This document shows, one piece after another, positions 1 to 64,000 of a stretch of DNA of 64,000 nt. This stretch comes from Bugula neritina. Lineage: Eukaryota > Animalia > Bryozoa. The DNA is taken from contig OZ037766.1 in assembly GCA_964035545.1 (NCBI GenBank), positions 31,920,773-31,984,772 of the forward strand, given 5' to 3'. The position numbers and the translations under genes were made by a program. Every line of letters starts with the position of its first letter. Within the stretch, counting starts at the first letter, position 1. The notes below the pieces were generated by a model. The model had not been told where the DNA came from, made no database searches, and saw only the letters and a program-made list of their open reading frames with translations.

Positions 1-65
1 TATAGCGTCTCTTTGTTCATGTCACATCCGTCTGCTTGTGAAGACGTTACGTCTGCTGTGTGTAG

Positions 66-38200: not shown

Positions 38201-41200
38201 TCTGGCCCTCAGACACTGGGATATTGTGTAACTTATTACACGTACATATTACATATATACGTATTACATATTGCACATACATGTTACATATAATACATAT
38301 ACATATTACATATATACATATATACATACTATATATTACATATATACATATTACATATTACACGTACATGTTACATATAATACATATACATATCAAATAT
38401 ATATGTATACTACATATTACATATATATATATATATTACATATCACACGTACATATTACATATATACATATATTACACGTACATATTACATATATACATA
38501 CTAGATATTACATATATACATATAGATATTACACGTACATGTTACATATATACACATACATATTACAGATGCTAATTTAGTCGGATTTCTGTGTTTCAGA
38601 TACAATACAGTCTAGTCACTGAAACACCCTACTTTGCTATTGATGAAACTACAGGGAAGATTATGGTGAGAGGAGTTCTGGACCGGGAAAGTAAAGACAG
38701 ACATATTCTAGAGGTCAAGGCCTCCGATATGCCAGGTACTGAGCCTCATCTGTAGACATCATTGTCAACTGAGCTCTTGTAGGCAACGGTTGAGTTAGGG
38801 GGCTTGAAGTCAATCAATATTCCTTGTGCAGTTATTAGAAGTAACTCAGCCTACTAGTGAACATTGCTAGTTTCTAGTTATTACTAGTAGTTGCTAGTTA
38901 CTACTATTAGATAGATATATCAGATAGATTGTTCTAGAACATGGTGGCTGTTGCAGGCGGACACGAAGAGGTTAGGTTTGCCACCACCACCGTAATTATC
39001 CACATAACGGACGTCAACGATAACGCCCCGCAGTTCATGAAGCCTGAGTTTGTGGTGAAGGTGAGAGAGGACATCCCTGTAGGTACAGTGATCACAAACC
39101 TGGTGGCCCAAGATGCTGACCTTCCAGCCACTGGCGGGGAAGTCACCTACAAGATTATTAAAGGTCAGTACGGCTAGTATGCCCACTGCTTTAGTATGAC
39201 TGTATCTAATGTCACCCTCTCTGTAGTTAGCTGCGTTCTTCAGACAGGACAGGTTGAGAGTTACTGTTTAGATGTAGAACTCAAGCTAAGTGTGTTTAGG
39301 AGAGGAAACTTGCACTGTCACAATTGTGACTTGAAAAGAGTTGGCGTAAAATATCCATGGAAATGTTTCAGTATAACCAGACCTTTATTCTGGTGCAGAT
39401 GCTCTGTCTTACTGTAGCTTACTTGCAGCTGTGTTGTGTGCCAATATACTTAGTCTGTGTTCCTACTGCATACTCTATAGCCTCTGTTTTATAGTCTATA
39501 CCTTGTATATTGTAACAAGTAAAGGCTCAAGCGTAAAGAATACTATATACAGCTGTTCCAGTAATAATTTTAAACCCATTCAAAATTACACTTGCATATT
39601 TTGCTATTACCATTTTGGAACGGAAGCAAATAAACAGAAAACGTCAAGGGAAGTCAATTTATGCATATTGTAATTATAACTCCTAACCGAAATGTTTCAG
39701 CGTATATTGCGTTGGCATTAAGTTGACAACAGGAATGCAGTGTTATATTGATTAGGCAATCAACTCTCCAATTCTAATAGCAAGTACTAATTACAGGCGG
39801 CGTGTCTACTTTCATCTGTGGAAAGCAAATGAAAGTCTATTTCTCCAACCACTTGAAGCACTTTACTAAATTATTTAAAAAGTTGAGCACTTTATCACTC
39901 CAGGAGAGAGTAATTGAAAGTGTTAAATGGAGAATATTGCAGTAGATTGTATAATTCATCCAGTTTTCAGAATATCTAGAAATTCATACATAAATCTCCA
40001 ATAGGACTAACTACGTCTGCTTCCACATTCTCGGATATTTAATCTGTCTTCAACTTGACAGACATATAGCTGGTTAACTGGTGTAGTGTTTTGCTTTGGC
40101 TGTAGCTGTTGTACTCTAGTTTATTGGGTTTCTAGGGAAGAGACGGGGCGTCACCAGCCAACAGACAGGTATAGAATCCAATTGCTCTAAGGCTGTCTGT
40201 ATCCTAGCTTTAGAGAGAGTGGGCAGCTGTACTGCTGGATATACACTCCTTGCTTACCTCCATGTTGTAACTGTGTAGTGCTCATCATGTGGTTTTGTTA
40301 TGTCAGCCTTTTATAGCTGGTAGCTTGCTTTGGGTTTAAGTTGGTGCTCCTTGCATGGCAGGGCTAAGGTCATTGTGTACAAACCTGTCCAGAATGCAGC
40401 TTTGTCTTTAGCTGCAACTGTTGTTATGGTGTGTACTAGTGTGTTTGTGACTGTTGCTATGGTGATACATATGCTATATGCTGATACATATTATGGTGAT
40501 ACATATGTTATATGCTGATACATATTATGGTGACACATATGCTATATGCTGATACATATTGCCTAGTTCTATTCGTGCTGTGGAGAGGGAGGCTGGTTTC
40601 AAACTTGCCCTGAGAGACCATCTAATGGCAAATTTCCAGATAAAAAAATAATACTTTTTTAAGTTGCTAAAACTTCCAAAAACCTAAACAAAAATCTTAT
40701 ATAACTGTCAACCATTCATGGCTCGGTGCCCCGACTAGCTACAGTGCTATTGCGCCATAGGCCCTGTCATTTTGTTTATTTTTTTCTCAATTAATTTTTT
40801 CCCGACTATGACAAAATAAAAAACAAACAAACAAACAAACATATTATGGTGATACATATGCTATATGCTGGTACATATTATGGTGATACATATGCTATAT
40901 GCTGATACATATTATGGTGATACATATGCTATATGCTGATACATATTATGGTGATACATATGCTATATGCTGACATTTTTCCAGTATTACAAATATTTAA
41001 GGTAGATAACTCCTAATTCACGTATAGAGTTTTCTTTAGGCATTTACTTTATTATTGTAATGTTAAGTGGTTGGCTCTGTTTTGCATGGCTTGTGATTGG
41101 GTAGAGGGTTTACAGTGTGTCTCTGTATGGTGGTGACATCTCTATATGTACCCTGTTTACCGCGTATAACATACATACATACATACATACATCCATGGTG

Positions 41201-44200
41201 GACACAGTGTTCATAACAGTGTTCACTTATTTCTCCCTTATCAGGAGTTGAAGATGTCTTTCACATTGACAAATACACTGGAATTGTTAAACTGATGAAA
41301 AAGCTAGACTATGAGCTAAAGACCATATATAGAATTACAGTGCGGGCTCGTGACAATGGTACCATTCCACTGAAGTCCAACTGTGATCTCGTTGTAAGTT
41401 CAGTTGTTCCGTGTGAACTACGTGTCTTCATGCGTGCGTTCATGCGGTAGTAAAAAAAATTCACAAAAAATCCAAATAGTTTTCCCACATATTTACAATG
41501 AATAAATTAGCGTAGTGTAGTAACCTTACTGGTGTATTGTTTGATGTTTGGAGTGTGCAATAACCAACCCCATCTGTTTTACCCTCTGAATGACCTCCAT
41601 CTACTATTATAATTGGGTTTTATGCAAATTCAGATTGCACCACAGTTGGCTAAATGATTGTCTTAGTAAACTTTGCTCTGAGCTACACAACATTTTATCA
41701 TCGGAGCAACTTGTCCAAGGGGAGAAGACTTCTCATTGTAATATGTATTATCATGTTACCATGTAAGAGATATGTTACCATATAAGTGATATGTTACCAT
41801 GTAAGTGATATGCTACCATGTAAGTGAGATGTTACCATGTAAGTGATATGCTACCATGTAAGTGAGATGTTACCATGTAAGTGATATGTTACCATGTAAG
41901 AGATATGTTACCATGTAAGTGATATGTTACCATGTAAGTGATATGTTACCATGTAAGAGATATGTTACCATGTAAGAGATATGTTACCATGTAAGTGATA
42001 TGTTACCATGTAAGTGAGATGTTACCATATAAGTGATATGTTACCATGTAAGTGATATGTTACCATGTAAGTGATATGCTACCATGTAAGTGAGAGGTTA
42101 CCATGTAAGTGATATGTTACCATGTAAGTGAGATGTTACCATGTAAGTGAGATGCTACCATGTAAGAGATATGTTACCATGTACGTGATATGTTACCATG
42201 TAAGTGATATGTTACCATGTAAGTGATATCTTACCATCTCATATCCTCCACAGGTTGAGGTAATAGACGTCAATGAGAACACCAACAGACCCGTGTTTGA
42301 CCAACTAGCCTATGAGCAGTCAGTGGACGAGTCAGTGCCATCCGGTACAACTGTCCTTCAGGTCAAGGCCATCGACAACGATGTAGCTGTGTCAGACCAC
42401 AGGCTATCTTACTCGATCAGAGGAGGGTCGGGCCTGGGCAGTTTCACCATAGATGATGAAGGTGACTCACTCTAACTCACTCTAACTCATTCACTCACTC
42501 ACGCACTCATTCACTCACTCACTCACTAACTCACTCACTCACTCACTCACTCTCTCTGTCTTCACCACGCCAACTGTATAATACAATGATTTTAAGCATG
42601 ACAGTTTATCCTCCCAGGGGCAGATAACACCTGTTCTCTAGAACCTTCTATATAGATGCTGGTGCTAATTTCTCTAGGTTACATCAAGACGGCCATCTTA
42701 CTAGACCGAGAGACAACGCCGTTCTATTGGCTGACTGTGTTTGTGGAGGACTACGGTTCAGTCCCTCTCTCCAGCTCTGTAGACGTGTACATCCAAGTGA
42801 AGGATGTCAATGATAACGCACCTCAGCCCAGCCAGCCAGTCTACTATGTAGAGGTTAAAGAGAATAGCCCTGCCGACCTCGATGTTGCTCATGTTCTTGT
42901 AAGTTCTCAGTCTAACATTGACCTTGGCATTTGTTGTCTACCTAATTTATTATAAATATTCTACTAGGACTATGATGTATGATTATATTGCATAGTAATT
43001 CATAGCAATTATATAGTAGCATTCATTCATGAATATTACTACATTATATCTACTCTATTATATCTACTTTATTATACCTGCTCAGTGTCATTATCACACT
43101 ATTCTGTACACATATGTTATAATTACTCTGTGTACAACATAAATGCTGGTAACATGAATGTTTAGTATACTATAATTATCTTTTGTTGATAAAAGTATAT
43201 ATTACTTTATCATAGACTAATATCATATTTATTATATTCATATCATTAGATTTTGATATTTATATATTTTTATTTGTATTTTCTTTCTTTATGTTATTTG
43301 ATTTTGAATTATATTTATATTATTGCATTTATATTATTGCATTTATATTATTGAGTTTATATTATTGTATTTGTGTTATTATATTTATATTATTATATTT
43401 ATATTATTGTATTTACATTATTATATTTATATTATTGTATTTATATTATTGTATTTATATTATTGTATTTATATTATTGTATTTATATTATTGTGTTTAT
43501 ATTGTTGTGTTTGTATTATTGTATTTATATTACTGTGTTTATATTACTGTATTTATATTATTATATTTATATTATTGTATTTATATTATTGTGTTTATAT
43601 TATTGTGTTTATGTTATTGTATTTATATTATTATATTTATGCTATATTTAATGTAACTTACAGGCCACAGATACTGATGAAACCTCAGACATAACCTACA
43701 GTATTACTGGAGGAAACACACAGAGTGCATTCACTATTGACTCAGTCACCGGTAAGAGAACTCTACTGTAGCTGATAGCACCACCTGTTGACTGTAGTTG
43801 TCTGCTCTCTGAACCTACTCTGCTCTGTATGCGACGTGTTTGGGTGTAAGGTTACTTGGTGCAAAGCTGCACTGTTGAAGTGCTGTGTTTGTATAATACT
43901 GAGACTATTGAGGGCACTTGAACAATGCTATAACATTCAATATTCAATGCATGGGTGTAATCAGTGGTACACTTGGTTCACCCAGCTCTGCGCAGCCAAT
44001 CCATTGCTTACCTAATCAGCAGCACCTGGACTTGCAGGTGATGCCTATTGCAAGCATCAGCTTTTTCTAGCCTCCCAGTCACATATTGTAAGCTGCATTG
44101 TATTAGTTGTTGTTAGCTTTTGGAATTTAGTCAATAGTCAAGATGCTCTTACATGTTCTGTCTGATTAGACAGTGACATGGGAGTTGTGGCTCCTGTAAT

Positions 44201-47200
44201 GAACTTTTTTCCCTGCAGAAATATCATTTTGGGTACAAACTAAGGGTAGGTTGGGTATAGTTGCAAGAATACACCTCACATGTTGGTGTAACCAGGCCCA
44301 TTTATAAATGAAGTTTTGAAAACAATAAAGTAATAGTGTAGCTGAAACAGTATTATTAGTAACTTGTGTAGAGTTGTGTTTCTTCCTCTATAGAACCTTT
44401 ACCAGCTAACTTCAGCTAGTTGGCTAGTTTACTTGACCCTTTCCTAGACTTACAAATTCTGTTCTAGAATATGCTGCCTGTTTTACAGTCACATATATGT
44501 TACATAATTTTGTAGCTTTCAGTTTCAATAGCCATGTCCACTCCTCTGTAACTGAATTCTTCTCTGCCTATTGTTTAAATTAACTGGCTATCTGTTCAAC
44601 ATGCGAAAATGATTTGATTAATGAAAAGTTATTCTATTTTTTAATTTTAAACAAAAGCTTATGTCAAATTATAATAGAAGTCAAATATACTGAAATATAT
44701 AAAATCTAGAACATGTGTAAGAGACATTCATTCATACTGTACCTAGCATACCAAAGGGCATTAAACTGAGATGATAATTAAGGTGTGTTGAGTGAAACAC
44801 TCAAGTAAGGTGTCTAATGGAAATGCAGACATAAATAGCTAAACTATTATAAATAATGCTGAGTGTTTACATCTTGAGGCTGCCTAAGTGTTTTTAATCC
44901 CCAAGTATAATAATAAGCACAGCAAGCATACATACACATGTTTATACAGTGAAGAGGGCCATTTCCAGACATTCAGCTTTCTATATTCTGCTAGACTCAG
45001 CTATGAGAGTTTATTACCCTAAACAATGCCAGCCTATGAAATAACCTTCAAATCACTTAGAAGATTGCTCTGCATATTGTGAATGTCACTCGTACTCTTG
45101 TGTAGTGAGACTCAACTCTAACTACTGGGGTTCGGCCCCAGTCATCTACAAAATATACCTTTTATTCCTTGCAGTACAAAGAAGTTTCTGATTAAAATTT
45201 TTACAGGCTGATTTTATAAATCCCTTGTATGTCAGTGTTATGTGCCCACAAGTTCATGTTTGTAATTAGGTGCTAGCAACATTATACTGTGTTACATGTA
45301 TTGTAATGTCACTCTACCACTAACTTCTGTGTGTATTACGTTACTATATTGCTTTATTATTATATTAGTATATTATTGTGTTACTCTATGCTTTTCCAGG
45401 AATTATAAAGACCACTCGTAGGACACTGGACAGAGAAAGTGAAGAACTTATCACTTTAGAGGTCAGATTTAAAAAATATTCCTCAATGTCTGTAATATAT
45501 TGGAGTTGCCCTCTTTTTTTCTGGTGACTTTGCATATGCTCCCATAGTCTAAGTTACATGTTAGTTGAAGTATAAATAAATTTTTGGTAGAACTTGGCAA
45601 TCATATTGATACTGTATTTTGCTGCTTTATATATTATGTGTATTACATGTTTATGTATTTATGGTTCAGGTTATGATAAGTGATGGAAGTGCAGGTTCTG
45701 CTCTCTCTTCAACTGTCCAGGTGTGGATAACTGTTACAGATGAGAATGACAACTCCCCAGTATGGAATACTCAGGGAAAACTCACTGTCTCAGTTCTCAG
45801 GTAGGTTGGGGTGTTACACTGTGAAACTCCCCCCTCCCCACACGTCACTTTGTAAAAGTACTTCTGGTCTGTTAATTCTCTGAGTGGGTGACAAGTGTTA
45901 TGTCATTGCAGGTCACATGACACGAGTAAGCCCGTGTACCGAGTGATAGCATTAGATGAGGATAAAGGGGAGAATGGTAACGTCTCCTACTCCATACCAC
46001 AGAGCTCAGACCAAGTTCTCTGGAGGATAGACCCAGTCACTGGTGAACTGTTCCTCAAATCTGATTGGCCATCTTCCAATCAAGTATCTGTGCGGGTCAG
46101 TATACTTAGATATTTGCAGACGAATATTCTCAAAGTGAGTCATCAGTTTTCCTTCAACAGTTTAGTGGTGATAACTTTGGGAATTAATTTACAAGTTATC
46201 AATCCAGTGTTGTGAGTGAGTGAGTGAGTGAGTGAGTGAGTGAGTGAGTGTAGTGAGTGAGTGAGTGAGTGAGTGAGTGAGTGAGTGAGTGAGTGAGTGA
46301 GTGAGTGTAGTGAGTGAGTGAGTGAGTGAGTGAGTGAGTGAGTGAGTGAGTGAGTGAGTGAGTGAGTGAGTGAGTGAGTGAGTGAGTGAGTGAGTGAGTG
46401 AGTGAGTGAGTGAGTGAGTGAGTGAGTGAGTGAGTGAGTGAGTGAGTGAGTGAGTGAGTGAGTGAGTGAGTGAGTGAGTGAGTGAGTGAGTGAGTGAGTG
46501 AGTGAGTGAGTGAGTGAGTGAGTGAGTGAGTGAGTGAGTGAGTGAGTGAGTGAGTGAGTGAGTGAGTGAGTGAGTGAGTGAGTGAGTGAGTGAGTGAGTG
46601 AGTGAGTGAGTGAGTGAGTGAGTGAGTGAGTGAGTGAGCGAGCGAGCGAGCGAGCGAGTGTAGTGAGTGAGTGAGTGAGTGAGTGAGTGAGTGAGTGAGT
46701 GAGTGAGTGAGTGAGTGAGTGAGTGAGTGAGTGAGTGAGTGAGTGAGTGAGTGAGTGAGTGAGTGAGTGAGTGAGTGAGTGAGTGAGTGAGTGAGTGAGT
46801 GTAGTGAGTGAGTGTAGTGAGTGAGTGAGTGAGTGAGTGAGTGAGTGAGTGAGTTAGTGAGTTAGTGAGTGAGTGACTTTTGATGAGGTATATTTTTAAA
46901 GCTTCGAACGACTGACCTTGAACCTTTCAAGTAACTTTTTATAATATTTTTGTGTAATTTTTTTATATTTTACTTGTGTTTGTTGAATTAACTCCCCTGT
47001 GTGTATATTTAGACTGCCGAGTTGTTTCGCATATGGGTAGGTCTACTCCAAAGACTGTAGCATTTTGTAGTCTTTGCGTTTCATTCTATCATCATGTAAA
47101 CATAACCCCATATCTTTACTTACCGCATGCACTCACTTTTACCTGCAAACAGTTGCATCAACTAGATTGTATATGTGATTAGCTTGGTTAAACTGGAGTC

Positions 47201-53200: not shown

Positions 53201-56200
53201 CACATATGAAGGTGTCATGGTGCATAGAGCCGCTGCTAAGGATGAGGATCTAAACACTGAGTTGACCTACGAGATTGTCAACGGCAATCTAAACAACAAG
53301 TTTGCAGTTGAGAGGCACACTGGTGTCGTTTATGTTAAAGACCCTTCAAACCTTCGCTCCAGCTACTCTTTGGTTGTGAAGGTAAAAATTGTGGTTGTCT
53401 CAACTGAAAGGCGTAGTTTCCTATAAGTTTAGTGTTGATTAGTAGAAAGTTTTTCCGGCAACAATTTAGGTTTTGTAAGTAATTTTTTATGTTAAATGGT
53501 TACTTTAAGTTCAGTTCATTGGGAAGCAGCACTTTCATTTTGCTTATAAACTTTTCTTTGCATAACTGTTAAGACTTTATGTACATTATACACATGATAC
53601 ACATGTTATACACATACACATGTTATACACATACATGTTATACACATACACATGTTACACACACTTCCTATATATACACTGTAGGTAAGTGACGGTGTGC
53701 ATGACGCTGTGTACAGTCTCATGATCAGTGTGATCGAGACCTCCAACTCTGGTCTCGCATTCACAGAGTCAACTTACACTGGAGAAGTCATTGAGAATAA
53801 AACTTCCACGCAGACTGTCCTCATCGTTGTGGTGCTGAACCGAGGTAAATTTCTCTGCGCAGATCTCATTGTAGTCTTTTTAAGTCTTATTAATAAAACA
53901 CTATAACTAAAACATATCTACATACATTTAATTTCTATCTTGTAAAAATATTACTTCCACTTTTGATTGACTGGATCATCTTTATTTGTTTAGAGCTTGG
54001 TGAGCCTGTGACCTTTGAACTCTTGAACTACCGTGACACCTTTAGAATCGGACACACTTCAGGTGTGATAGAGACGATACCGGGAGCAGTGATTGACAGG
54101 GAAACTAGGTCAAGGTGAGTGCAATGTCAAATGATATAGAGATTCTATAAACTTTACACGCTCCTTGTACAACTGTCCCTTTCACAATTGTCCTCTCTTT
54201 CTTGGCAATTTTATTTAAAAACAAAATTATTTTCTTCTACACATGCTAATAAAGATATGTATTTTGATATATTAAATCTGTTACGAAACTCTGTTTTCAT
54301 GTTGAACATGGCGGCATGTTTAAGACGCCCACAACAACTAGATGCTGTTGGTGAAGAATGTCAGGCTAATGTCAGATATTCTGCAGATTGATACATACTC
54401 AGATCTGATTACTATCTTGTAGTTACGAGGTGATAGTGAGGGTAGCATCGCTGGGCAAAGAGATTAGGTTAGCCCAAGTTCGTGTTGTTGTGTCTGTCAA
54501 GGACATCAATGATAACGCCCCTTATTTCAGCAAGGAACACTACCACGCCTCAACTACTGTGGATACGGCACGGCAAACCTCCGTGTTACAGGTCAGTGAG
54601 ATTCTGGTTTCCTTTTGTGGGTGGATTTTACTGTGAGCTGTGATTTTCTAGGTGTGGGTTTTGTGTTAATTCTTGAAAACTTCACTTTGATTCATATAAT
54701 TCGTCAGGTGAAGGCTAATGACGACGATGTGGGCATCAATAGCGAGATACGCTATGACATCTACAACAGTGCAACTAATGACTTCAGAATAAACAGAAAG
54801 ACTGGAGACATCACAGTGAAGAGATCTCTGGTAGACAAGGCAAATATGGAGTACATGCTGACTATAGTCGCAACTGATCAAGGTAATTTAAATACTTAGG
54901 AGTTGTTTACCCTGTGACGGAGTTGTAGCCTGCTTCTGCTCAACCCACCCATTGGTTGATTTTCAATTGAAACCATAAATATGTTTTTAAAAGATAAAAA
55001 ATATAGCCTGTACTTAACTGCCTAATTTAGACGTCGACTAATTTCCTTTCCAGATGATTAGTTTAGATTTTTCTATTGTATACCCAGCTCTCAAGCTATT
55101 GTATATCCAGCTCTCAAGCTATTGTATACCCAGCTCTGAAGCTATTGTATACCCAGCTCTCAAGCTATTGTATACCCAGCTCTCAAGCTATTGTATATTG
55201 AGCTCTCAAGCTATTTTGTTGTAGGAGAACCTAGTCTAAGCACGCAGACAAATCTCACCATTAAAGTGTTTGCGGAGTCGACACCGAATTTCACGCAAGT
55301 TGTTTATGAGTCATCAATACCTGAAAACATCCCCATCAGCTCTGCCGTTACTACTGTGAACGCAGAGAGTACACACGGGAACAAAATAATCTACACGATC
55401 TCCGAGGGGGATCCAGACAGCGAGTTCACAGTGCACTTCAGTACAGGTATATTTTCCATCCTCACTTTGCTGCTTTCTCTCTTACCTTCACATATTTGGA
55501 GACTTTGTACAGACAGTTGATGACTGTCTGCTAATAGAAAAGTCTCATAGACATATTCAGTCACTGACTGACTGACTCTCAGGCAGGCTGGCTGGCTGGC
55601 TGGCTGGCTAGCTGACTGAGTGAAGAGTAGAGTAAATAAGTGATGTCTGGCTTTTTGCTAGTACAACTTAAAGAAACCTAAATCACTATGATTCACTTAC
55701 TCACTATGGCTTACTGACTGACTCCAAGTTACTAACTCACTGTGATTCACTTACTCACTATGACTTGCTGACCGACTCTCATTCACCCACAGACTGCCCC
55801 TGACTCACTCCCTGACCCTAACGGACATGCTAAGTGACTGTAGCTATTCATTTTATGTAACTGATTAATTGTCTTGACAGGCTGCAGCTCACCACTCATC
55901 ATAACCTAAGCTCTTAGACTAAACATGCGGGCATGCAGATGCTGTCTCCAACCCAAATTAGCCTAAGAGTTTAGGCTAGCTATAAGTCACTGCTCTCACT
56001 AGTTTGCTGCTGCATCACTGATCACTATTAGTCACTGTATATTTACTAATATTTTCTAGCCATGGATTACAATGGGCCCTGTAAGTATGATATTGGTATT
56101 GTTGTCTAGTTTTTACTTGCCAAATGTTTCATTTATTTGAGCTGTTGAGTCCTCAAAGGTGGAGTGTACCGATGATCCTTACCATCTCAGATGTGTTCCC

Positions 56201-59200
56201 AGCTCCTTCCAGCTTTCACATTAACCAACCATTGGGACAAATTTTGATTGTATTGATTGTACCAATCTGGGATCATAAATGCTTTGTAAATGTTTTAAAA
56301 TGCTGATTGGTTGATGGTGATTGCTTCTAACATTATGTGTAAACAGCCGGTGTTGATAAATTTGAGGGGTTGAGGGCGCAGCTGAGGGGTTGTAGGCGGA
56401 GCTGAGGGGTTGAGGGCCGGACATGATTTCTGTTGATTTTGATCTTCTAATAATATTTATTGTGCAGTGTTGAGCTAATCATTTAGGCAGTGAGTGAAAC
56501 TTGCTAGCTAAGTCAATATTAGTTAGAATATTTCTTCTTGTTCATTGATTGAGCCTACCTCACTCTCTTCTCTTGTCTCTTCACACTACATTTTCTCTTT
56601 GTTGCAAGGAGCTACTTCCTGTCAGCCATGTTTTTCATGAAATTAGCTACTCTTGATTGATTATTAATTTGTAATTTCTCACGTCATTGTGATTCCTCAA
56701 TTCATTGTGATTCTAAAACAATGCTCAATTTCAGTTACAGTGTTGGCTATTATGTGCTTAATTTAATTTGCTTTTTCAGGAATTTCGTGATATTTATTTT
56801 TAATAGTAAATAATTCCATTCACCTATCCTAAACGCTCTAACACCAGAAAAGTGTCCCAGTCAAACCTTGTAAAACCAATCTGGATGTCATCGTAGTTCA
56901 TTTTAATCGCACTACTATTGACACGTTTGAATGTACTGGTTTAGTTACTGTCCTGTGGACCCCAAGTGGAACTTAACCCATCTGTAGACACACCCCTTTA
57001 GTTAGACAAGCATGTCACTTAGTACATAGAAGTCGTCTGCACTTTTCTCTCTCCCTGTTAAAGTAGAACGTCTTTTGAAGTATGACATCATTCTCTCTTC
57101 TAGGTACTATTAGCGTCAACGATGACCTGGACTTTGAGTTGAAGTCTCAGTATCGTCTAAAGATACGGGCAGTAGACGTAGTGACGGGGGACTGGGCTGA
57201 TGCTGTGGTTATTATCAACGTGCAGGTAGATATTGGGCTATGCCCTTCTTGCTGGTGCTTGGTCTCTCCAGCTGTTGGACAGACTCTATGCTGGTTTACA
57301 ATTAGGTTTTGTAATGCTGGGTGTTGCTAGATTCAATGTTTAGTGGATTTTATTTACATGATGGGGCGAGGCTAATTGGCCCTTTAATTGTGTAGTGATC
57401 ACCAGATAATATAAATGTTTGCAAAATTGAGAAATCTTAAAATCCTTAACAGAAAGTCAGAGATTAGATTAAGTCACCTTCACTCAGTGTGAGGGTTGAA
57501 AGGGGATACAGTAAGTTACGTTATATTATTGCCATTTCTAACAGGATGTTAACGACCAGAAGCCCTACTTTGGACTGCTGGACTACTACAAGACAGTGTC
57601 GGAGGCCATTACAGTTGGCAGCCATGTTATGACCATCAATGCATCCGACGCTGACCAGGGTATCAACAGTCTCATCCACTACACTCTGAAACCCATCCAC
57701 GCTGACTCACCACACCACCTCATGTTTGATATATCGGTGAGTGTAAGAGACCAGATTATCTTCAGTCTACTCTCAGTCTTTCACCCATAGCCTTCCAAAC
57801 TCTTGAGTCTATACTCTGTAACCACTATCTTACAGGATACTGGGGAAGGGCAGGCAGAGGTTCGCACCGTCTTACCTCTGGACCATGAGAGGTACCAGAG
57901 GCTAGATTTCATAGTCGTGGCCACTGATGGCGGAAACCCCCGACTCTCAGCCGAAGCATACGTTCACGTTCTACTCAATGGTTAGTCGGTTTATACAGCC
58001 AAAGCTGTTGTCAGTGAATGACAGCAATTACTACGTAGAGTTAGTAAAAGAGCAGTTGCAGTGTAATGAGTAAAGGTACACTGCACTGTCAGGATGTGCA
58101 TTGCATCATGAGTACACAACAGAGCACTAGCTACATGGTGTCATCTAAATACTTCCAGTGTCATGAGTGCAAGCTAACTCAACTTTACTTCTTATGTGAG
58201 TTTAGTTCACTATTCTCTCCTTCGTGGAGTGGGGATGCAACTCCCTTCTATAGCCTTGATGTCTCCGGTAACTCTTCAATCACAATTCATTATACCTGCA
58301 TGTAGATCTCAATGACAACCCTCCGGTGTTTGAGGAGTCTATTTACACCGTGGAGATTTCGGATGAGGTGGAGAAAGGGCAGTTTGTTGCTATGGTCGGG
58401 GCTTTGGACCCTGACGATATCAATGAGGGGGAGCTGATGTACAAGTAAGTAGATGTAACTTACACTTACCTATAGAGACATATCTGATGTACGTGTAAGT
58501 AGATGTAACTTGCACTTACCTATAGAGACATACCTGGTGTACAAGTAAGTAGATGTAACTTACACTTACCTATAGAGACATACCTGATGTACAAGTAAGT
58601 AGATGTAACTTACACTTACCTATAGAGACATACCTGATGTACAAGTAAGTAGATGTAACGTATCTCTACTTATATATAAATATATGAATTTAATACTCTA
58701 TTTGAATATGTTTAGTATTGTACACGGGAATGAAGGCCAGGCGTTCACCATTAACCAAAACACTGGTTCTGTCTACGTCTCACCCTTTCACCAAACTACC
58801 ATGTTTTCTGACGCGTATTCTCTCAACATCTCCGTGTCGGATGGCATCTACACCAGCTTCACCAGCCTGACTGTTGACGTGAGAGCAGCCAACAGGTGGG
58901 TAGTCTCTTATCTTCCCGTAGACAATGTTCACTGTGATATTTGTTGGCAATATTCACTGTGACAGACAATGCTAACTATGATATTTGTAGACACAGTCCC
59001 GAGTTTGACTCTATACTCTACACTTTTCAAGTGCTGGAGAATAGTGAAAAAGGTCGTGTGCTAGGTCAGGTCAAGGCCAACGACGAAGACAAAGGGCGGT
59101 ATGGAGAGATAACTTACTCTTTGGTTGGGGATTGGGTTCAGGATCACTTCAAGATTGATCAGGCTACAGGTGTGTTGATTAATGTAAATCAACCTTTGCC

Positions 59201-62200
59201 TCGCCACACTAGTATATCATAAGTTGACTGTGTTCCCATGTCACACTAGTATATCATAAGTTTACTGTTTCCTCGCCAAACTAGTATATTATAAGTTGAG
59301 TGTTTTCGTGCCACACTAGTATATCATAAGTTTACTGTTTCCAGGGGACATCAGTCTCAAGTTTATCCCCGACCGTGAGCAGAGAGATTTCTTCATGCTT
59401 CCTGTGATGGCGCAAGATGCAGGCGGAAAGACTGAGTTCACGTCTGTATACGTTGTGGTCGATGATGTTAACGACAACAGTCCACAGTTTGTAGCCTCAG
59501 GTATTTGCCAGTTGGTGTCTCCACTTGAATCTAATCTTTCACCTGTCAAGTTAAATATCTACTATTAGTTCCATCTCCAGGATCAGTTAATTGGTGAGAA
59601 TGAAGTACTAGCTGTAAGACCCAGTATCATTTGCCTTGTTACTTGGTCTATGAACTCGAGCTACTCTTATAGTATTTGTGATGATAATTTACCCTCCCCA
59701 TGTTCCTGTAGGATACTCTGCTACGGTGTTCAGTAACTCCTCCGTCCACACACCAGTGATTACGGTCTCGGCATTCGACTCGGACAAGCAGAACAACGCA
59801 AAGCTGCGTTACTTCCTGCTCTCGGACACCCCGGACATCACCGGTCTGTTTAGGATAGACCAAGACTCAGGCCAAATCAGTCTGGCACGGGAGCTCCTTG
59901 CCAACGGTGAGTTTGATTGGTTCAGCTGATAGAGAACTGTGCTACGTTCAGCAACTGTTGGTGTTTAGTCAGTGGATGGAGCCGAGTGTTCATAGAATGT
60001 TTCGTGTACTCTTTGTAGAAAGAGACAGTGTTATCGAGTTCTACATCCGGGTTACCGACTCCGGTGAACCAGCCCTCGAGGACTCGGCTTTGGTGACGGT
60101 GACCTTCACCTCTGAGGCATTTCCTGTTTTTCGAACGGGCAGCTCTCAGATGTTCCTGGAAGAATCTGAGCCAATCGGTACCGAGGTCACTCAGGTAAGT
60201 GAAGTGTTGCTTTGCCACGCCCAGGCGTCTCGCTAACCACCACATCCTCTGTACAGGCATGTCTCAATCTAACTTGCTTATAATATATTAGGTGCGGGCT
60301 GACTATGCTGGAGATCACAGGCTATCGTATAGAATAAGATCCGGCTCTAGTGTGAGGACCAACAAACCCCCATCATTCGCTGTCGACTCTGAGGGTCGTA
60401 TCACTACCATCAGGTCTTTAGACAGAGAGGTACGTCTGCTTGCTGCTAGTTACTTCCCATTCGATTAATCCCTGTGATTGTATTACTGTATAGTATATTA
60501 CTGTATAGTATATTACTGTATAGTATGTTACTGTATAGTATGTTACTGTATAGTATATTACTGTATAGTATATTACTGTATAGTATGTTACTGTATAGTA
60601 TGTTACTGTATAGTATATTACTGTATAGTATATTACTGTATAGTATATTACTCTGTAGTATATTACTGTGTAGTATATTACTCTGTAGTATATTACTGTA
60701 TAGTATATTACTGTATAGTATATTACTGTATAGTATATTACTCTGTAGTATATTACTGTGTAGTATATTACTCTGTAGTATATTACTGTATAGTATATTA
60801 CTGTATAGTATATTACTGTATAGTATATTACTGTATAGTATATTACTGTGTAGTATATTACTCTGTAGTATATTACTGTATAGTATATTACTATATAGTA
60901 TATTACTGTATAGTATATTACTCTGTAGTATATTACTGTATAGTATATTACTGTATAGTATATTACTGTAGTATATTACTGTATAGTATATTACTGTCTA
61001 CCACCACAGAGCCAGGCTGTGTACGAGATTGTAGTGGAAGTGTTCACTCACTCGGAACCCGAGCTAGTCGCCAGCACTCTAGTCCGTGTCTCTCCGATAG
61101 ACTCCAACGACAATCCTCCTGAGTTCACGTCTGGCGAATACGCAGTCGGCATAGCTGAGAGTATCCCAGTGGGAGCCAGTATCTTGCAGGTAAGACTAGA
61201 CTATGCTCTGATGCAGGTAAAGTGTTGTGGTGTGTTCTAAGACTAAGTACTAACGTGTGGTTTACTCGGGTTAAATCTGTAAAGCGTTTGTGTCTGGTTG
61301 TAGTGGGGATACAACTGTATTTGACGCACTGTGACTTGCACTTGTGTATAATAATAGCACCAGCTCGCTCACTCAACTCAGAAACTGCCATTTTGTCATG
61401 AGTCATGGGTGTGTGGTTTCCCATGAGGTCTCTTGGAGTTTCTGGGTTGTGTGAGTTTGCAGCTAGTGATGTCATAACTGCTCGTCTCCCAACTAATATG
61501 TTTTGTCTTACTTTAACGCTAGGCTCACGTTGTACATGGACGGGTAAGTTGTAACCTACACTGTCACACACACACACACTGTCACACACACACACGCGCA
61601 AGCTATATAACCTTTGAAGAGAGTGCTGCTGCATTAGTCACATTTAATTTTCTTTCATCGTGTCTTGTACGTTTATGCAATCGTATATATGTTTCATTTG
61701 AATCGCTCAGTTGCCAAGAGAGTTGGAAAATGTTACCAATCGAATCATTCTGTAATAACTACCATCTAGTCATGCAGTATATCCTGTTAGTAGTTTGCCA
61801 TCCATCCTCCAGTACATATACATGTCACGTGTAGCTAAGGTAGCCCTAGTCACCAATGTGAGAAATAGTCTAAATCTAGCGACTCAACTTGCGTATTTAT
61901 AAGTTCAGCTATTACCAACTAATGTATTGTGTATGTAGCACCTGGTGTTTTACTGTTGTCAGTGCGCAGTCTACATTGTACAGTCTACATTGTACAGTCT
62001 ACATTGTACACACGTGTGGCCTCTGCTCTTGTTCTCCTTGCCCTCTATGAATGTACATCATGTTGTCAGTGTGTTCCTGACCGATAGTTTCATCTGCAGC
62101 TCATCTCTGCAGTTTACATCTGCAGTCATAAACCATATGTCTAACCTCAGTTTAATTTATCCATAACTCTCAGTTCAACTGTGTTACAAAAACACAGCTG

Positions 62201-62757
62201 TTAGCACACGTCTGCTTTCAGCACATGTCTGCTGTTACTACTGCTTTCACAATGCTTATAAATCTTATCCTTTAAATACATTATATACACAAATATAATA
62301 TTCTAACCATCACAAATATTTCTACATGCACAGGGATCATGCTTCATCTGTAAAAAATAAATTTCACAAGATAGTATGCAGCCTTCTGTAAATATAACTG
62401 GCTTATGTAGAGAAATAGCATAGCTGAGGGTGCTGAAGGTTGTTGCTCGCTTCTACGAATGTTTTGCATCATTTCAGGTGTCGGCTTTCGATCAGGATCA
62501 AGATCACGAATCTAATATAATCTATTCATTTGCACCGGAGTCCAAGATGTTTAGTAATCTATTCATGGTTGAGCCTCACCACGGCTGGATTAGCTCTCTG
62601 GTTCCTCTAGACCGAGAAAAGCGGTCTTCCTATGAGTTCTACATTCAGGCCAGCGACGAAGACAGTCGAGGGAAACTTAGCTCTAAGGCTAAAGTCAAAA
62701 TCAACTTACTGGACGTCAACGACTGCGCCCCGCAATTTGCTAATACCAAGTTGATAG
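29216..62757 (+). CDS. Fat1/Fat-like (kugelei/cdh-4-type) atypical protocadherin, 3'-partial; ~50 coding exons, ~27 cadherin repeats in window
   Basis: A signal-peptide-like start is followed by the Fat1/2/3-type first repeat (FTRPSY…MGI…FKAELLRVGDFAFLFIRTK…LNRE); the LLTPTYEGV motif at 53184; repeated DxNDNxPxF, AxDxD and LDRE/LDYE motifs in phase-compatible exons from 29216-29888 through 62478-62757. No TM, EGF or LamG domain yet, so the gene continues past the window. Confidence 0.93.
35095..35535 (+). repeat. 19-bp minisatellite (gtagtgtatactgtatcag) filling almost the entire intron
   Basis: The unit spans the junction tgtatcag|gtagtg; only 31 nt of the intron (35534-35564) are unique. 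Confidence 0.95.
35967..36172 (+). repeat. 29-bp minisatellite spanning a 3' splice site, 7 copies
   Basis: ctttcattgatgtctactatttcag|ctctc units; the last AG is the acceptor of exon 36168. Confidence 0.9.
40136..40168 (+). CDS. Candidate Fat microexon, 33 nt, phase 1-1 (GKRRGVTSQQT)
   Basis: tttctag|ggaagagacggggcgtcaccagccaacagacag|gtatag; in frame with the flanking exons. Confidence 0.6.
40561..40838 (+). mobile_element. Short non-LTR retro-insertion (SINE or LINE 3' end) inside a 34-bp minisatellite
   Basis: Ends in AATAAA plus an (AAAC)n tail; flanked by ACATATT at 40554-40560 and 40839-40845; it splits the array at ~40457-40560 / 40839-40975. Confidence 0.65.
41754..42238 (+). repeat. 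19-bp minisatellite (gttaccatgtaagtgatat) abutting the 3' splice site
   Basis: About 25 copies, most containing GTAAGT; ends ~15 nt before exon 42254. Confidence 0.95.
43300..43650 (+). repeat. AT-rich 14-bp degenerate minisatellite (atttatattattgt)
   Basis: Ends just before acceptor 43663. Confidence 0.85.
44219..44245 (+). CDS. Candidate Fat microexon, 27 nt, phase 1-1 (EISFWVQTK)
   Basis: ttttttccctgcag|aaatatcattttgggtacaaactaagg|gtaggt. Confidence 0.6.
46212..46876 (+). repeat. (GAGT)n microsatellite, ~660 bp
   Basis: Near-pure run with a few gagc/gtag interruptions. Confidence 0.97.
47013..47036 (+). CDS. Candidate Fat microexon, 24 nt, phase 0-0 (TAELFRIW)
   Basis: gtatatttag|actgccgagttgtttcgcatatgg|gtaggt. 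Confidence 0.55.
48108..48527 (+). repeat. 33-bp minisatellite spanning a 5' splice site (gcttg|gtgagctagtag…), ~12.5 copies
   Basis: Starts at donor 48113 with a period of 33. Confidence 0.95.
49154..49294 (+). other. Probable GC-AG intron in the Fat gene
   Basis: GAG|GCTAGT … tttgcag|GAC joins IIINVE to DNNDHAPKF, restoring the calcium-binding linker. Confidence 0.7.
49574..49609 (+). CDS. Candidate Fat microexon, 36 nt, phase 1-1 (ENCTTINDCNSK)
   Basis: tttcctttgtcgtcacgcag|aaaactgc…ctccaaag|gtaatt. Confidence 0.7.
51103..51405 (+). repeat. Intron made of one 33-nt plus ten 27-nt GT…AG units (gtataatactagtgttatgtaatacag)
   Basis: 303 nt = 33 + 10x27; every unit boundary is CAG|GT. Confidence 0.95.
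51861..51878 (+). CDS. Candidate Fat microexon, 18 nt, phase 1-1 (APFHET)
   Basis: TACTAAC (51841) tcttgtgttacag|ccccattccacgagacag|gtagtg. Confidence 0.65.
55074..55214 (+). repeat. 23-bp minisatellite (attgtatacccagctctcaagct), ~6 copies, next to an acceptor
   Basis: Ends ~10 nt before exon 55225. Confidence 0.9.
56060..56080 (+). CDS. Candidate Fat microexon, 21 nt, phase 1-1 (AMDYNGP-C)
   Basis: tactaatattttctag|ccatggattacaatgggccct|gtaagt. Confidence 0.75.
58434..58659 (+). repeat. 50-bp minisatellite spanning a 5' splice site, ~4.3 copies
   Basis: The unit includes 11 exonic nt, ctgatgtacaa|gtaagt…; donor-like copies at 58445, 58495, 58545, 58595, 58645. Confidence 0.93.
59200..59342 (+). 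repeat. ~36-bp minisatellite ending at a 3' splice site
   Basis: cactagtatatcataagtttactgtttcc units; the last ends in tttccAG. Confidence 0.85.
60480..60997 (+). repeat. 15-bp minisatellite (tattactgtatagta) abutting a 3' splice site
   Basis: About 34 copies, ending ~10 nt before exon 61010. Confidence 0.95.
61523..61543 (+). CDS. Candidate Fat microexon, 21 nt, phase 0-0 (AHVVHGR)
   Basis: actaatatgttttgtcttactttaacgctag|gctcacgttgtacatggacgg|gtaagt. Confidence 0.7.
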
Positions 62758-63129
62758 GTACAGACAGATCATAGTCTATTTAGTGTGAATTTTATACGTG
62801 TGGTTTGTAAAGCTGCACTTTGTCTCTCACTAAGTAGTAGAGTTTGAACCACAGCATGTTTCCAGGAGTCTTTTTAGAGTTTCCGCGAGACTTTTAGAGT
62901 AAATTAGTGTTGAAATGTGAGAACTAGCACGTTCTACCTGTATAGATGTACTGTGTGTACTGTATGCATTGTGTACCATAAGTGTATATCTATATATTGT
63001 CCTAGAATTCTAACCTGCCTTTCCTATTACACTTTCTATCACAAGCGGCCATGTTTTATGTACTGGACTGTAAAGTGTAACTCTATCTGTCCTCTAATTG
63101 ATGTATCTAATGTATTATACCACCTGTAG

Positions 63130-63156
63130 GAAGTTCTAGGTACTGGAATGATTCAG
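63130..63156 (+). CDS. Candidate Fat microexon, 27 nt, phase 1-1 (GSSRYWNDS)
   Basis: ccacctgtag|gaagttctaggtactggaatgattcag|gtaatt, in the phase-1 intron after exon 62478-62757. Confidence 0.6.
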
Positions 63157-64000
63157 GTAATTCAATATGGCTCTCTCATCTCACTTCCTCTCGTCATTCT
63201 AACACTCGACAATTAAACACTGATTCAAATATATCCATCTATATACTCCTGTACTAAAATCCTCAATAGTGGGCGTGGTTTGATTATGCTATTTTTAGGC
63301 GTGGTCAGAATTTAGGTTTTATTTGTGGGTGTGGTTAAGTTTTGGGCCTAATCAATTATTTTTCTTGACTTTGAATTTAATAAAAGAAAAATGTGTGCTA
63401 AGTTTGTGTGAGCTAATTTTTTGAAATGTAAACGTTTTGCAGCTTTTTAAGCATCTGGTGTGACAAAACTTACCAACGCTTGAGTGTATTGTGTGTGAAT
63501 TTTTTACAATGTATAATCATCATCGCTTGAAAAATGTAAGGAATTTTGCAACCAAATTAAAATAAAATTTAGGGTGTAAAACTAAAATACAGGGTTCAAG
63601 TTATCTCCACCTACTCTATCACTGCATGCCTCATGGCTCTCTATGTGTAGTCTATGTTACTTCCTGCATGCTACGATATTCAATGTTAGTCTTCAATGAT
63701 TCTCTCAGTAGATGTCAATCAGAAATAGTGTTCCTACAATTTATTGTCTGTATTTGTTCTGCCACATCAATTATTCTAATGACTATCAAGTGATTCACTT
63801 TACTTACTATAAATTGTGTTCAATGTGCTAGATGTTATGCCTTGTCCATGTGGCTTATCCCATTCCGTTATCAGTGGATTATGTTATCAAACAGCTTCTT
63901 TATGTTGAAATATTTCACTGGAATTGTGTCCACCATGCAGATTTCACTGGAATTGTGTCCACCATATAACTGATGCTGCATTCCTTAGCATGACTTGTAC

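What the first reader, a model, noticed from the sequence alone, without database searches (positions are those of the whole stretch)
40136..63156. A hidden array of at least 8 frame-preserving microexons: a possible combinatorial code on the Fat-like cadherin ectodomain
Seen: most Fat introns here are ~90-500 nt, but 8 of the ~12 introns longer than 800 nt each contain one AG-flanked/GT-ended segment of 18-36 nt (40136-40168, 44219-44245, 47013-47036, 49574-49609, 51861-51878, 56060-56080, 61523-61543, 63130-63156). Every one is a multiple of 3, is stop-free in the phase of its host intron (six phase 1, two phase 0), and has a credible donor and a pyrimidine tract or CTAA[C/T] branch point. 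The flanking exons already give complete cadherin repeats without them, so they would be optional inserts. None is visible in the ORF track. Established: bilaterian neural microexon programs (Srrm2/3/4 eMIC domain, Rbfox) insert short surface peptides into proteins, and Dscam1 and clustered protocadherins diversify adhesion receptors by isoform combinatorics. Inference: independent inclusion would give up to 2^8 = 256 ectodomain variants from this part of the gene alone, a possibly undescribed way of diversifying a giant cadherin. Alternatively they switch together as one tissue-specific (e.g. neural) isoform. Caveat: found by eye, so chance AG…GT in-frame pairs are possible.
Basis: partly seen in the sequence, partly recalled or inferred. 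Interest (0 to 1): 0.88.

Follow-up and report, generated by a model that had tools for sequence, protein, structure and literature searches.

The report
Conserved optional microexons in Fat cadherin
The long introns of a giant Fat1-type cadherin gene, probably from a bryozoan, hide very short, frame-keeping exons; at least three of the eight proposed, plus a ninth found here, are conserved in related species yet skipped in most transcripts, so the adhesion protein can carry small optional surface inserts.

Summary
All eight segments are AG-flanked, GT-ended, multiples of 3 and stop-free in their intron's phase (six phase 1, two phase 0). They lie in 8 of the 12 introns over 800 nt; the median intron is 303 nt.

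They are not all chance. Relatives' exons are only 60-73% identical and their introns otherwise unalignable.
- c5 (51861-51878), c7 (61523-61543) and c8 (63130-63156) are conserved islands in two to three relatives, with AG/GT and a 3n length kept.
- c5 keeps its peptide through synonymous changes only. c8 keeps an N-x-S/T sequon.
- RNA contigs gave a ninth cassette, 52337-52384 (48 nt), with both junctions; it is also conserved.
- The same contigs show c3, c4 and c5 skipped in the main isoform. One contig joins the upstream exon to the c5 acceptor.
- Among all strong AG..GT pairs outside tandem repeats, 8 of 14 are frame-preserving, against about 19% expected (p about 0.002).

c1, c2, c4 and c6 could not be tested across species and are probable. 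c3 is doubtful.

Neural regulation and a 2^8 combinatorial code remain untested.

The closest known parallels are the LAR-RPTP and NRCAM ectodomain mini-exons.

An unchecked note of this scan lists another cadherin microexon array elsewhere in this genome.

The parts
29216..64000 (+). Fat1/2/3-type giant cadherin gene, from the start codon to the window end. It continues beyond: the next exon starts about 201 nt past the window. 50 exons were modelled up to 62757.
   Evidence: Pfam Cadherin hits on exons. Collinear with proteins that sources name protocadherin Fat 1-like, residues 1 to about 2960. RNA joints confirm 9 introns. The downstream exon is in L022.
40136..40168 (+). c1: 33-nt candidate microexon, phase 1. 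It would insert about 11 residues (GKRRGVTSQQT) after the Y-x-I-x-K-G motif of a repeat.
   Evidence: AG/GT, 3n, stop-free. Acceptor 6.5 bits, donor 6.2 bits. No cross-species or RNA test was possible.
44219..44245 (+). c2: 27-nt candidate microexon, phase 1 (EISFWVQTK), at a T-G turn.
   Evidence: Best acceptor of the set, at 7.9 bits, with a 7.7-bit donor. Untested otherwise. A second frame-preserving pair, 44020/44023-44037, lies in the same intron.
47013..47036 (+). c3: 24-nt candidate, phase 0 (TAELFRIW). The weakest candidate.
   Evidence: Acceptor 0.7 bits, donor 5.7 bits. Skipped in X1 and X4 transcripts, which join 46095 to 47648. A sibling-strain contig, L020, shows 2 changes in 24 nt, one non-synonymous, in a stretch that is well conserved anyway.
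49574..49609 (+). c4: 36-nt candidate, phase 1 (ENCTTINDCNSK: two Cys and an N-C-T sequon), after Y-S-L-Q-S-G.
   Evidence: The main isoform joins 49445 to 50295 in X1, X2 and X4. Intronic contigs begin at 49571 and 49581, and nothing covers 49446-49570. Position 49571 is the first base shared by the exon end and the c4 acceptor (CAG), as expected at a branch between an exon-to-c4 junction path and an intron path. This is suggestive only.
51861..51878 (+). c5: 18-nt microexon, phase 1. It inserts A-P-F-H-E-T into the D-x-G loop between strands F and G of a repeat.
   Evidence: 18 nt with AG/GT kept in L003 and in L004-L009. Identity is 92%, against 69-73% for the flanking exon. Every substitution is synonymous in phase 1 only. 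It ranks 1 of 108 AG..GT segments of the intron. It is skipped in the main isoform. One X2 contig carries the last 10 nt of the upstream exon joined to 51861.
52337..52384 (+). New 48-nt cassette exon in the same intron as c5, phase 1, 16 residues (ALDSQFLNAPWLGVHS).
   Evidence: Joints 51724 to 52337 and 52384 to 52843 appear in X1 (depth 323 against 1742 for skipping) and in X2 (50 against 264). It is 48 nt in L003, with 7 synonymous and 4 non-synonymous codon differences in phase 1, against 3/9 and 0/11 in the other frames.
56060..56080 (+). c6: 21-nt candidate, phase 1 (AMDYNGP, with the junction codon becoming Cys), at a T-G turn.
   Evidence: AG/GT, 3n, stop-free. Acceptor 3.3 bits, donor 6.6 bits. 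Untested otherwise. The T at exon position -1 and the unpaired Cys are mild points against it.
61523..61543 (+). c7: 21-nt microexon, phase 0 (x-H-V-x-H-G-L/R), inserted in the G-x-x-I-x-V-x-A-x-D stretch of a repeat.
   Evidence: 21 nt, TAG acceptor and GTAAGT donor kept in L001 and L018 at collinear places. It ranks 1 of 215 by a thin margin. Not found in the 1040 nt that L002 holds upstream. The codon test does not discriminate between frames.
63130..63156 (+). c8: 27-nt microexon, phase 1 (G-S-S-R-Y-W-N-D-S), inserted just after the P-x-F start of a repeat. It carries an N-x-S/T sequon.
   Evidence: 27 or 30 nt with AG/GT kept in L001, L002 and L023. Y-W-N is invariant, and the sequon reads NDS, NDT, NDT and NGT. 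The skipped form gives canonical spacing to V-N-E-D. No RNA was laid here.
49154..49294 (+). GC-AG intron of the gene. It corrects the exon to 49029-49153.
   Evidence: Joint 49151 to 49293 in X1, X2 and X4. Only the shift by 2 gives a GC..AG intron.

Best explanation
The window carries the first ~2,940 codons of a Fat1/2/3-type giant cadherin. Earlier notes of this scan name the animal as the bryozoan Bugula neritina; I did not check that.

Most introns are short. Twelve are long, and at least four short cassette exons sit in them: c5 (18 nt), a new 48-nt exon, c7 (21 nt) and c8 (27 nt). c1, c2, c4 and c6 probably belong too. Each is a multiple of 3 and open in the intron's phase.

The default transcript skips them and encodes canonical cadherin repeats. 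A minority of transcripts includes them and gains 6-16 residues, mostly at recurring turn or loop positions of repeats in about the 9th to 28th of the ectodomain. Most phase-1 cases split a Gly codon, which is rebuilt after the insert.

Shown: the sequence features, cross-species conservation with coding-type substitution patterns, skipping in bulk RNA, inclusion of the 48-nt exon, and use of the c5 acceptor.

Inferred: the inserts change the surface, glycosylation (c8 sequon, c4 sequon and Cys pair) or rigidity of the ectodomain in particular cell types, and so tune its binding. Which cells include them, and whether inclusion is coordinated, is unknown.
For: - Coordinates, AG/GT, 3n and open frames.
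- Gene identity and canonical skipped junctions.
- Conservation islands lie exactly on c5, c7, c8 and the 48-nt exon, in relatives whose exons are 60-73% identical and whose introns otherwise do not align.
- Rank among all AG..GT segments of the same intron: c5 is 1 of 108 in two relatives, c7 is 1 of 215, and c8 is beaten only by its own sub-segments.
- Codon pattern: c5 is all synonymous in phase 1 only; the 48-nt exon is 7 synonymous to 4 non-synonymous in phase 1, against 0-3 to 9-11 in the other frames.
- RNA: nine canonical joints; skipping of c3, c4 and c5; both junctions of the 48-nt exon; the exon-to-c5 junction, an exact match to the last 10 nt of the exon.
- Enrichment of frame-preserving pairs among all strong pairs: 8 of 14, p 0.002. 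Excess over shuffles.
Against: - No transcript was seen with c5 spliced at both ends. The one junction contig runs on unspliced past the c5 donor.
- No RNA was laid on c1, c2, c6, c7 or c8, so c7 and c8 could be constitutive in this lineage.
- c1, c2, c4 and c6 have no conservation test. At the loosest thresholds about 4 frame-preserving decoys are expected by chance.
- c3 has the weakest sites and a non-synonymous change in a sibling strain.
- c7's margin over unrelated segments is thin, it was not found in L002, and its codon pattern is uninformative.
- c8's first 9 nt look more synonymous in another frame.
- Contigs cannot give inclusion levels.
Confidence: 0.85

Rival explanations
1. Chance: the segments are fortuitous in-frame AG..GT pairs in long AT-rich introns, picked by eye, and have no function.
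For: Splice scores are ordinary to weak. Shuffled introns still yield about 4 frame-preserving pairs at the loosest threshold. Eighteen non-frame-preserving pairs of similar strength exist. c3 shows no constraint in a sibling strain.
Against: c5, c7 and c8 are the best or near-best conserved segments of their introns in two to three relatives, with splice sites and 3n length kept. Frame-preserving pairs are enriched at every threshold. RNA shows that the c5 acceptor is used. As an account of all eight this is excluded. For c3 alone I put it near 0.6, and for each of c1, c2, c4 and c6 near 0.3.
Confidence: 0.03
2. Constitutive lineage-specific exons: c7 and c8 (no RNA seen) are always included in bryozoans, so they add fixed inserts rather than optional ones.
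For: Both are conserved in two to three relatives. No RNA was laid over them. c8's donor is strong, at the 71st percentile.
Against: The three candidates that were covered by RNA are all skipped in the main isoform, including the equally conserved c5. Skipped junctions reproduce the canonical repeat spacing seen in Fat1 of five phyla. c7's acceptor is at the 2nd percentile of real sites.
Confidence: 0.15
3. Splicing aids, not coding exons: the segments are recursive-splicing or decoy exons that help remove long introns stepwise and never reach the mature mRNA.
For: They lie only in the longest introns. The single c5 junction contig has the upstream part spliced and the downstream part still present, as a stepwise intermediate would. 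Intron coverage starts at c4 and c5. This genome carries arrays of decoy splice sites in intronic tandem repeats.
Against: Substitutions in c5 and in the 48-nt exon are synonymous in the correct phase only. The c8 indel is exactly 3 nt and its sequon is kept through S/T and D/G changes. The 48-nt exon is seen spliced at both ends in mature-type contigs. A pure splicing aid need not keep frame or peptide.
Confidence: 0.05

Closest known systems
LAR-type receptor phosphatase mini-exons meA/meB (PTPRD, PTPRS, PTPRF)
   Same: Several very short, frame-preserving optional exons insert a few residues into repeated extracellular adhesion domains. There the inserts decide which partners are bound (abstract of PMC12598525).
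   Different: Those sit in Ig domains of a phosphatase, are vertebrate, and have shown neural regulation and known ligands. Here the domains are cadherin repeats of a Fat1-type protein, and partners, tissue and regulation are unknown.
L1-family IgCAM microexons (for example NRCAM)
   Same: Multiple exons of 30 nt or less within one adhesion ectodomain are included or skipped by cell type (PMC12456627).
   Different: Ig/FnIII architecture. Inclusion levels are measured there, not here.
Vertebrate FAT1 36-nt penultimate exon (+12 residues)
   Same: Same gene family, and a short optional frame-preserving exon (PMC12721327). It is visible in the catfish isoforms compared.
   Different: It lies in the cytoplasmic tail. 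Annotated Fat1 isoforms of a hemichordate and of catfishes differ almost only in the tail, with one 23-residue ectodomain insert in one catfish isoform. None matches c5, c7 or c8.
Bilaterian neural microexon programme (Srrm2/3/4 eMIC domain)
   Same: Size class, frame preservation, conservation above the neighbouring exons, minority inclusion in bulk tissue.
   Different: Neural specificity and dependence on the eMIC domain were not testable. UGC motifs near the acceptor are inconsistent. A six-frame search for the SRRM C-terminal family in this genome was silent, as were its controls.
Dscam1 mutually exclusive exon clusters and clustered protocadherins
   Same: Isoform diversity of an adhesion ectodomain.
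   Different: Those use arrays of similar full-size alternative exons or alternative promoters. Here the exons are dissimilar, tiny, one or two per intron, and simple cassettes.

Membership tests
Fat1/2/3-type giant protocadherin | Long tandem array of cadherin repeats | tested here: met
   Pfam PF00028 on several exons. About 2,940 modelled residues align repeat by repeat.
Fat1/2/3-type giant protocadherin | Collinear with named Fat1-like proteins from the N-terminus | tested here: met
   Chains of 36-40 segments cover residues 1 to about 2960 of proteins named protocadherin Fat 1-like or FAT1_2_3.
Fat1/2/3-type giant protocadherin | C-terminal laminin-G/EGF modules, one membrane span, Fat-type tail | not tested
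   This lies beyond the window. Only 10 kb more was fetched, and it still holds cadherin repeats.
Alternative cassette microexon | Short exon (about 3-30 nt, up to 51 in wide use), multiple of 3, open in phase, AG and GT | tested here: met
   All eight, plus the 48-nt exon.
Alternative cassette microexon | Conserved across species above the surrounding intron, with splice sites and frame kept | tested here: met
   Met for c5, c7, c8 and the 48-nt exon. Inconclusive for c3, where only a sibling strain was available. Not testable for c1, c2, c4 and c6.
Alternative cassette microexon | Both skipped and included forms present in RNA | tested here: inconclusive
   Met for the 48-nt exon. For c5, skipping plus the upstream junction only. 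For c3 and c4, skipping only. c1, c2, c6, c7 and c8 were not covered.
Neural eMIC (Srrm3/4)-dependent microexon | Neuron-specific inclusion | not testable with these tools
   Only whole-sample contigs of mixed origin were available.
Neural eMIC (Srrm3/4)-dependent microexon | UGC-type enhancer close to the acceptor; an eMIC-bearing gene in the genome | tested here: inconclusive
   UGC lies upstream of c8 in three relatives and upstream of c4, c6 and the 48-nt exon. It is absent at c3, c5 and this genome's c8. The PF15230 search was silent, and so were its controls.
Recursive-splicing (RS) exon | Removed from the mature mRNA; no constraint on the encoded peptide | tested here: not met
   Phase-specific synonymous pattern in c5 and in the 48-nt exon; frame-keeping indel in c8. 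The 48-nt exon is spliced at both ends in contigs.
Dscam1-type mutually exclusive exon cluster | Tandem similar alternative exons within one cluster | tested here: not met
   The inserts are unrelated in sequence and sit in separate introns.

The most novel reading that the evidence does not exclude
The nine or more cassettes are included independently of one another in different cells. A single Fat1-type gene would then yield hundreds of ectodomain variants (2^9 = 512 from this part alone) that act as a recognition code, for example in neural wiring or in self/non-self contact between colonies. Such a route to adhesion-receptor diversity has not been described for giant cadherins.
Probability: 0.12. 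Interest if true: 0.85.

Novelty: new member of a known kind. Interest (0 to 1): 0.62.

Why it matters
Fat1-type cadherins are large, ancient regulators of cell polarity, migration and tissue shape. Their ligands and the roles of most of their 30-odd repeats are poorly known. The literature found here describes only cytoplasmic splice variants, and five full-text searches found no ectodomain microexons in this family.

Conserved, optional 6-16-residue inserts at defined loops point to the repeats whose surfaces matter. One insert carries a conserved glycosylation sequon. This makes the question testable: which repeats, which cells, which partners.

It also shows that microexon-type regulation of adhesion ectodomains exists in a little-studied lophotrochozoan group.

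A practical point follows. Gene models built from open reading frames or protein homology alone miss these exons.

Tried and rejected
1. The one exhaustive protein search ranked hits by summed repeat score and gave no close ortholog. I used the collinear Fat1-like proteins only to place exons.
2. My first two exon models had wrong ends at three places. The RNA joints corrected them, which changed the c5 intron from phase 0 to phase 1.
3. The third protein search (exon 48588-48797) returned only a 96% sibling. Walking upstream from L004 through its first open frame reached only about 400 nt, and c4's counterpart was not in it.
4. Sibling-strain contigs (L010, L011, L020) are too close to discriminate. 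Introns are 86-88% identical and exons 94-98%.
5. c7 was sought in L002 without success.
6. Scans for UGCAUG, UGC and branch-point motifs gave no consistent signal.
7. A six-frame search for PF15230 (SRRM C-terminus) in the genome found nothing, and its controls were silent too, so it says nothing.
8. Searches for the run accessions in papers found nothing, so I did not verify the organism's name.
9. A 33-nt contig match at 47441-47473 is T-rich low complexity, and I discounted it.
10. Not used: structure and complex prediction, and the JGI metagenome scan. Only sibling-strain contigs came from JGI, and such contigs are uninformative.

The spliced protein model was never sent to a search tool. 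Exons were searched one by one by reference, and joining was done only inside scripts for alignment.

Full report
**What is there**

The + strand from 29216 to the end of the window encodes a giant cadherin. Exons carry Pfam cadherin domains. One exhaustive search with a single exon returned thousands of cadherins. Among the best 150, eight proteins align collinearly with the window from residue 1 to about 2960. Their sources name them protocadherin Fat 1-like or FAT1_2_3, from a cuttlefish, a nemertean, a hemichordate, a limpet and catfishes.

I modelled 50 exons by dynamic programming over ortholog-supported blocks and splice sites. The model was checked against a multiple alignment and corrected at three places with RNA joints.
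- The median intron is 303 nt.
- Twelve introns exceed 800 nt.
- The gene runs on past the window; the next exon starts about 201 nt beyond it.
- Earlier notes of this scan name the genome as the bryozoan Bugula neritina. I did not verify this. The labels of the RNA runs that hold the gene (symbiont and biofilm metagenomes) fit such an animal.

**The observation**

All eight segments are as described: AG before, GT after, and 33, 27, 24, 36, 18, 21, 21 and 27 nt long. Each lies in a different long intron. With the corrected model, six introns are phase 1 and two are phase 0, and every segment is open in that phase. Eight of the twelve long introns host one. The skipped junctions align to Fat1 of other phyla without a gap.

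**Is it more than chance?**

I trained splice-site matrices on the gene's own 49-50 sites and listed every AG..GT pair in every intron.
- Dinucleotide-preserving shuffles give 4.2 +/- 2.0 frame-preserving pairs of 18-36 nt at the loosest threshold, against 13 observed. Four of the 13 are copies within one tandem repeat. Shuffles also destroy pyrimidine tracts, so they understate the null.
- A better control is internal. With tandem repeats masked and phases corrected, strong pairs of 15-51 nt number 14 (acceptor at least 3 bits, donor at least 5.5 bits). Eight of them keep the frame, against about 19% expected (p 0.002). The excess holds at every threshold tried.
- From the count of non-frame-preserving decoys I expect about 1-2 false candidates among the eight with acceptors above 3 bits. 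Among the five weaker ones I expect about 3.

**Conservation**

Exon-by-exon protein searches found genomic contigs of several related species in public assemblies. I fetched them. Their exons are 60-73% identical to the window at the DNA level and their introns do not align, except for short islands that fall exactly on candidates.
- **c5:** 18 nt in both relatives, with AG and GT kept. Identity is 92%, against 69-73% for the adjoining exon. All substitutions are synonymous in phase 1 and in no other frame. The peptide A-P-F-H-E-T is unchanged.
- **c7:** 21 nt in two relatives, with a TAG acceptor and a GTAAGT donor, and the peptide pattern x-H-V-x-H-G-L/R. Its margin over unrelated segments is thin, and a third relative's 1,040 nt upstream do not show it.
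- **c8:** 27 or 30 nt in three relatives. Y-W-N is invariant and the N-x-S/T sequon is kept as NDS, NDT, NDT and NGT. Its first 9 nt look more synonymous in another frame. The flanking exons fix phase 1.
- **Ranking:** among all AG..GT segments of the same intron, scored against the orthologous intron, c5 ranks 1 of 108 twice and c7 ranks 1 of 215. c8 is beaten only by its own sub-segments.
- **Limits:** every candidate that could be compared with a distant relative (three of eight) proved conserved. Contigs of a sibling strain are too similar to be informative.

**RNA**

I laid one stretch of 5,991 bases (46990-52980) with the contigs of four runs.
- Three runs come from a strain about 5% different and one from a near-identical one.
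- Nine canonical introns are confirmed, among them a GC-AG intron (49154-49294).
- The dominant contigs join 46095 to 47648, 49445 to 50295 and 51724 to 52843. So c3, c4 and c5 are skipped in the main isoform.
- In two runs a second path joins 51724 to 52337 and 52384 to 52843. It is open in phase 1 and runs at roughly a fifth of the depth of the skipping path.
- That cassette is 48 nt in a relative as well, with 7 synonymous against 4 non-synonymous codon differences in phase 1.
- One contig begins with eight letters that, with the next two, reproduce exactly the last 10 nt of the upstream exon. It then continues with c5 from 51861 and runs on unspliced. The c5 acceptor is therefore used in vivo; use of its donor was not seen.
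- Intron coverage in the c4 intron starts at 49571, the first base shared by the exon end and the c4 acceptor. This is what a branch between a junction path and an intron path would give. I count it as suggestive only.
- Contigs show presence, not absence or level.

**What the inserts would do (inference)**

Most phase-1 cases split a Gly codon that is rebuilt after the insert.
- c1 and c4 lie after the Y-x-I/L-x-x-G motif.
- c2 and c6 lie at the T-G turn before L-D-x-E.
- c5 and the 48-nt exon lie in the D-x-G loop before the last strand.
- c8 lies just after the P-x-F start of a repeat.
- c7 and c3 lie within strand-like stretches.

The positions recur at equivalent places in different repeats, from roughly the 9th to the 28th. 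c8 adds a conserved glycosylation sequon. c4 adds a sequon and two cysteines. c1 adds K-R-R.

The most likely effect is a local change of surface, glycan or inter-repeat geometry that tunes binding in the cells that include the exon. No partner, tissue or regulator is known. UGC and UGCAUG motifs are inconsistent, and the search for an eMIC-type gene was uninformative.

**Comparison with what is known**

- Optional mini-exons in adhesion ectodomains are established for LAR-type phosphatases and L1-family IgCAMs.
- For Fat1, the literature found here describes a 36-nt cytoplasmic exon.
- Annotated isoforms of a hemichordate and of catfishes differ almost only in the tail.
- I found no description of ectodomain microexons in Fat-type cadherins. 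The library is incomplete, so this is not proof of absence.
- I file the finding as a new member of a known kind.
- One unchecked note of this scan lists another cadherin microexon array, in a cytoplasmic tail, elsewhere in this genome.

**Verdict**

These are real, conserved, optional microexons for c5, very likely for c7 and c8, and for a ninth exon of 48 nt.
- c1, c2, c4 and c6 are probable, at about 0.7 each. c3 is doubtful, at about 0.4.
- The combinatorial code and neural control are untested.

The spliced model was never sent to a search tool; exons were searched singly by reference.

Noticed in passing
window 12515-17160: An LTR retrotransposon upstream of the cadherin gene. It has one uninterrupted 1,316-codon frame (12729-16676), flanked by two repeats of about 215 nt with near-identical translations (12515-12730 and 16939-17160).
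   Followed up: no
window 35095-35535, 41753-42237, 48108-48526, 51120-51407, 58434-58659, 60481-60997: Many introns of this gene hold tandem arrays of 15-50-nt units that contain donor-like or acceptor-like motifs, for example a 19-nt unit with CAGGTAGT repeated 24 times. They create rows of decoy AG..GT pairs, some frame-preserving: four 33-nt pairs lie at 35193-35495. This resembles the decoy-acceptor intron noted 8.6 kb upstream of the window (s1-476075).
   Followed up: partly
window 46212-46876: A (GTGA)n microsatellite of 165 copies fills much of the c3 host intron. A sibling-strain contig holds a far shorter copy.
   Followed up: no
window 63269-63281 and L001 3860-3872: A G-rich 13-mer (GTGGGCGTGGTTT) lies about 110 nt downstream of c8. 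It is kept in one relative and is partly repeated 30 nt further on in the window. It may be an intronic splicing element.
   Followed up: no
window 44020-44037: A further frame-preserving AG..GT pair (15 or 18 nt, donor 7.1 bits) lies in the c2 intron, 180 nt upstream of c2. It is untested.
   Followed up: no
window 1-2500 and 12189-12401: Protein-kinase-like coding pieces lie on the + strand upstream of the cadherin gene. Similar peptide stretches occur at 1294-1530 and at 12189-12401.
   Followed up: no
P0018 residues 1393-1415: One annotated catfish Fat1a isoform carries a 23-residue ectodomain insert after a W-F-D-I-T motif. This corresponds to the short intron 47859-47963 of this gene, not to any candidate.
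   Followed up: no
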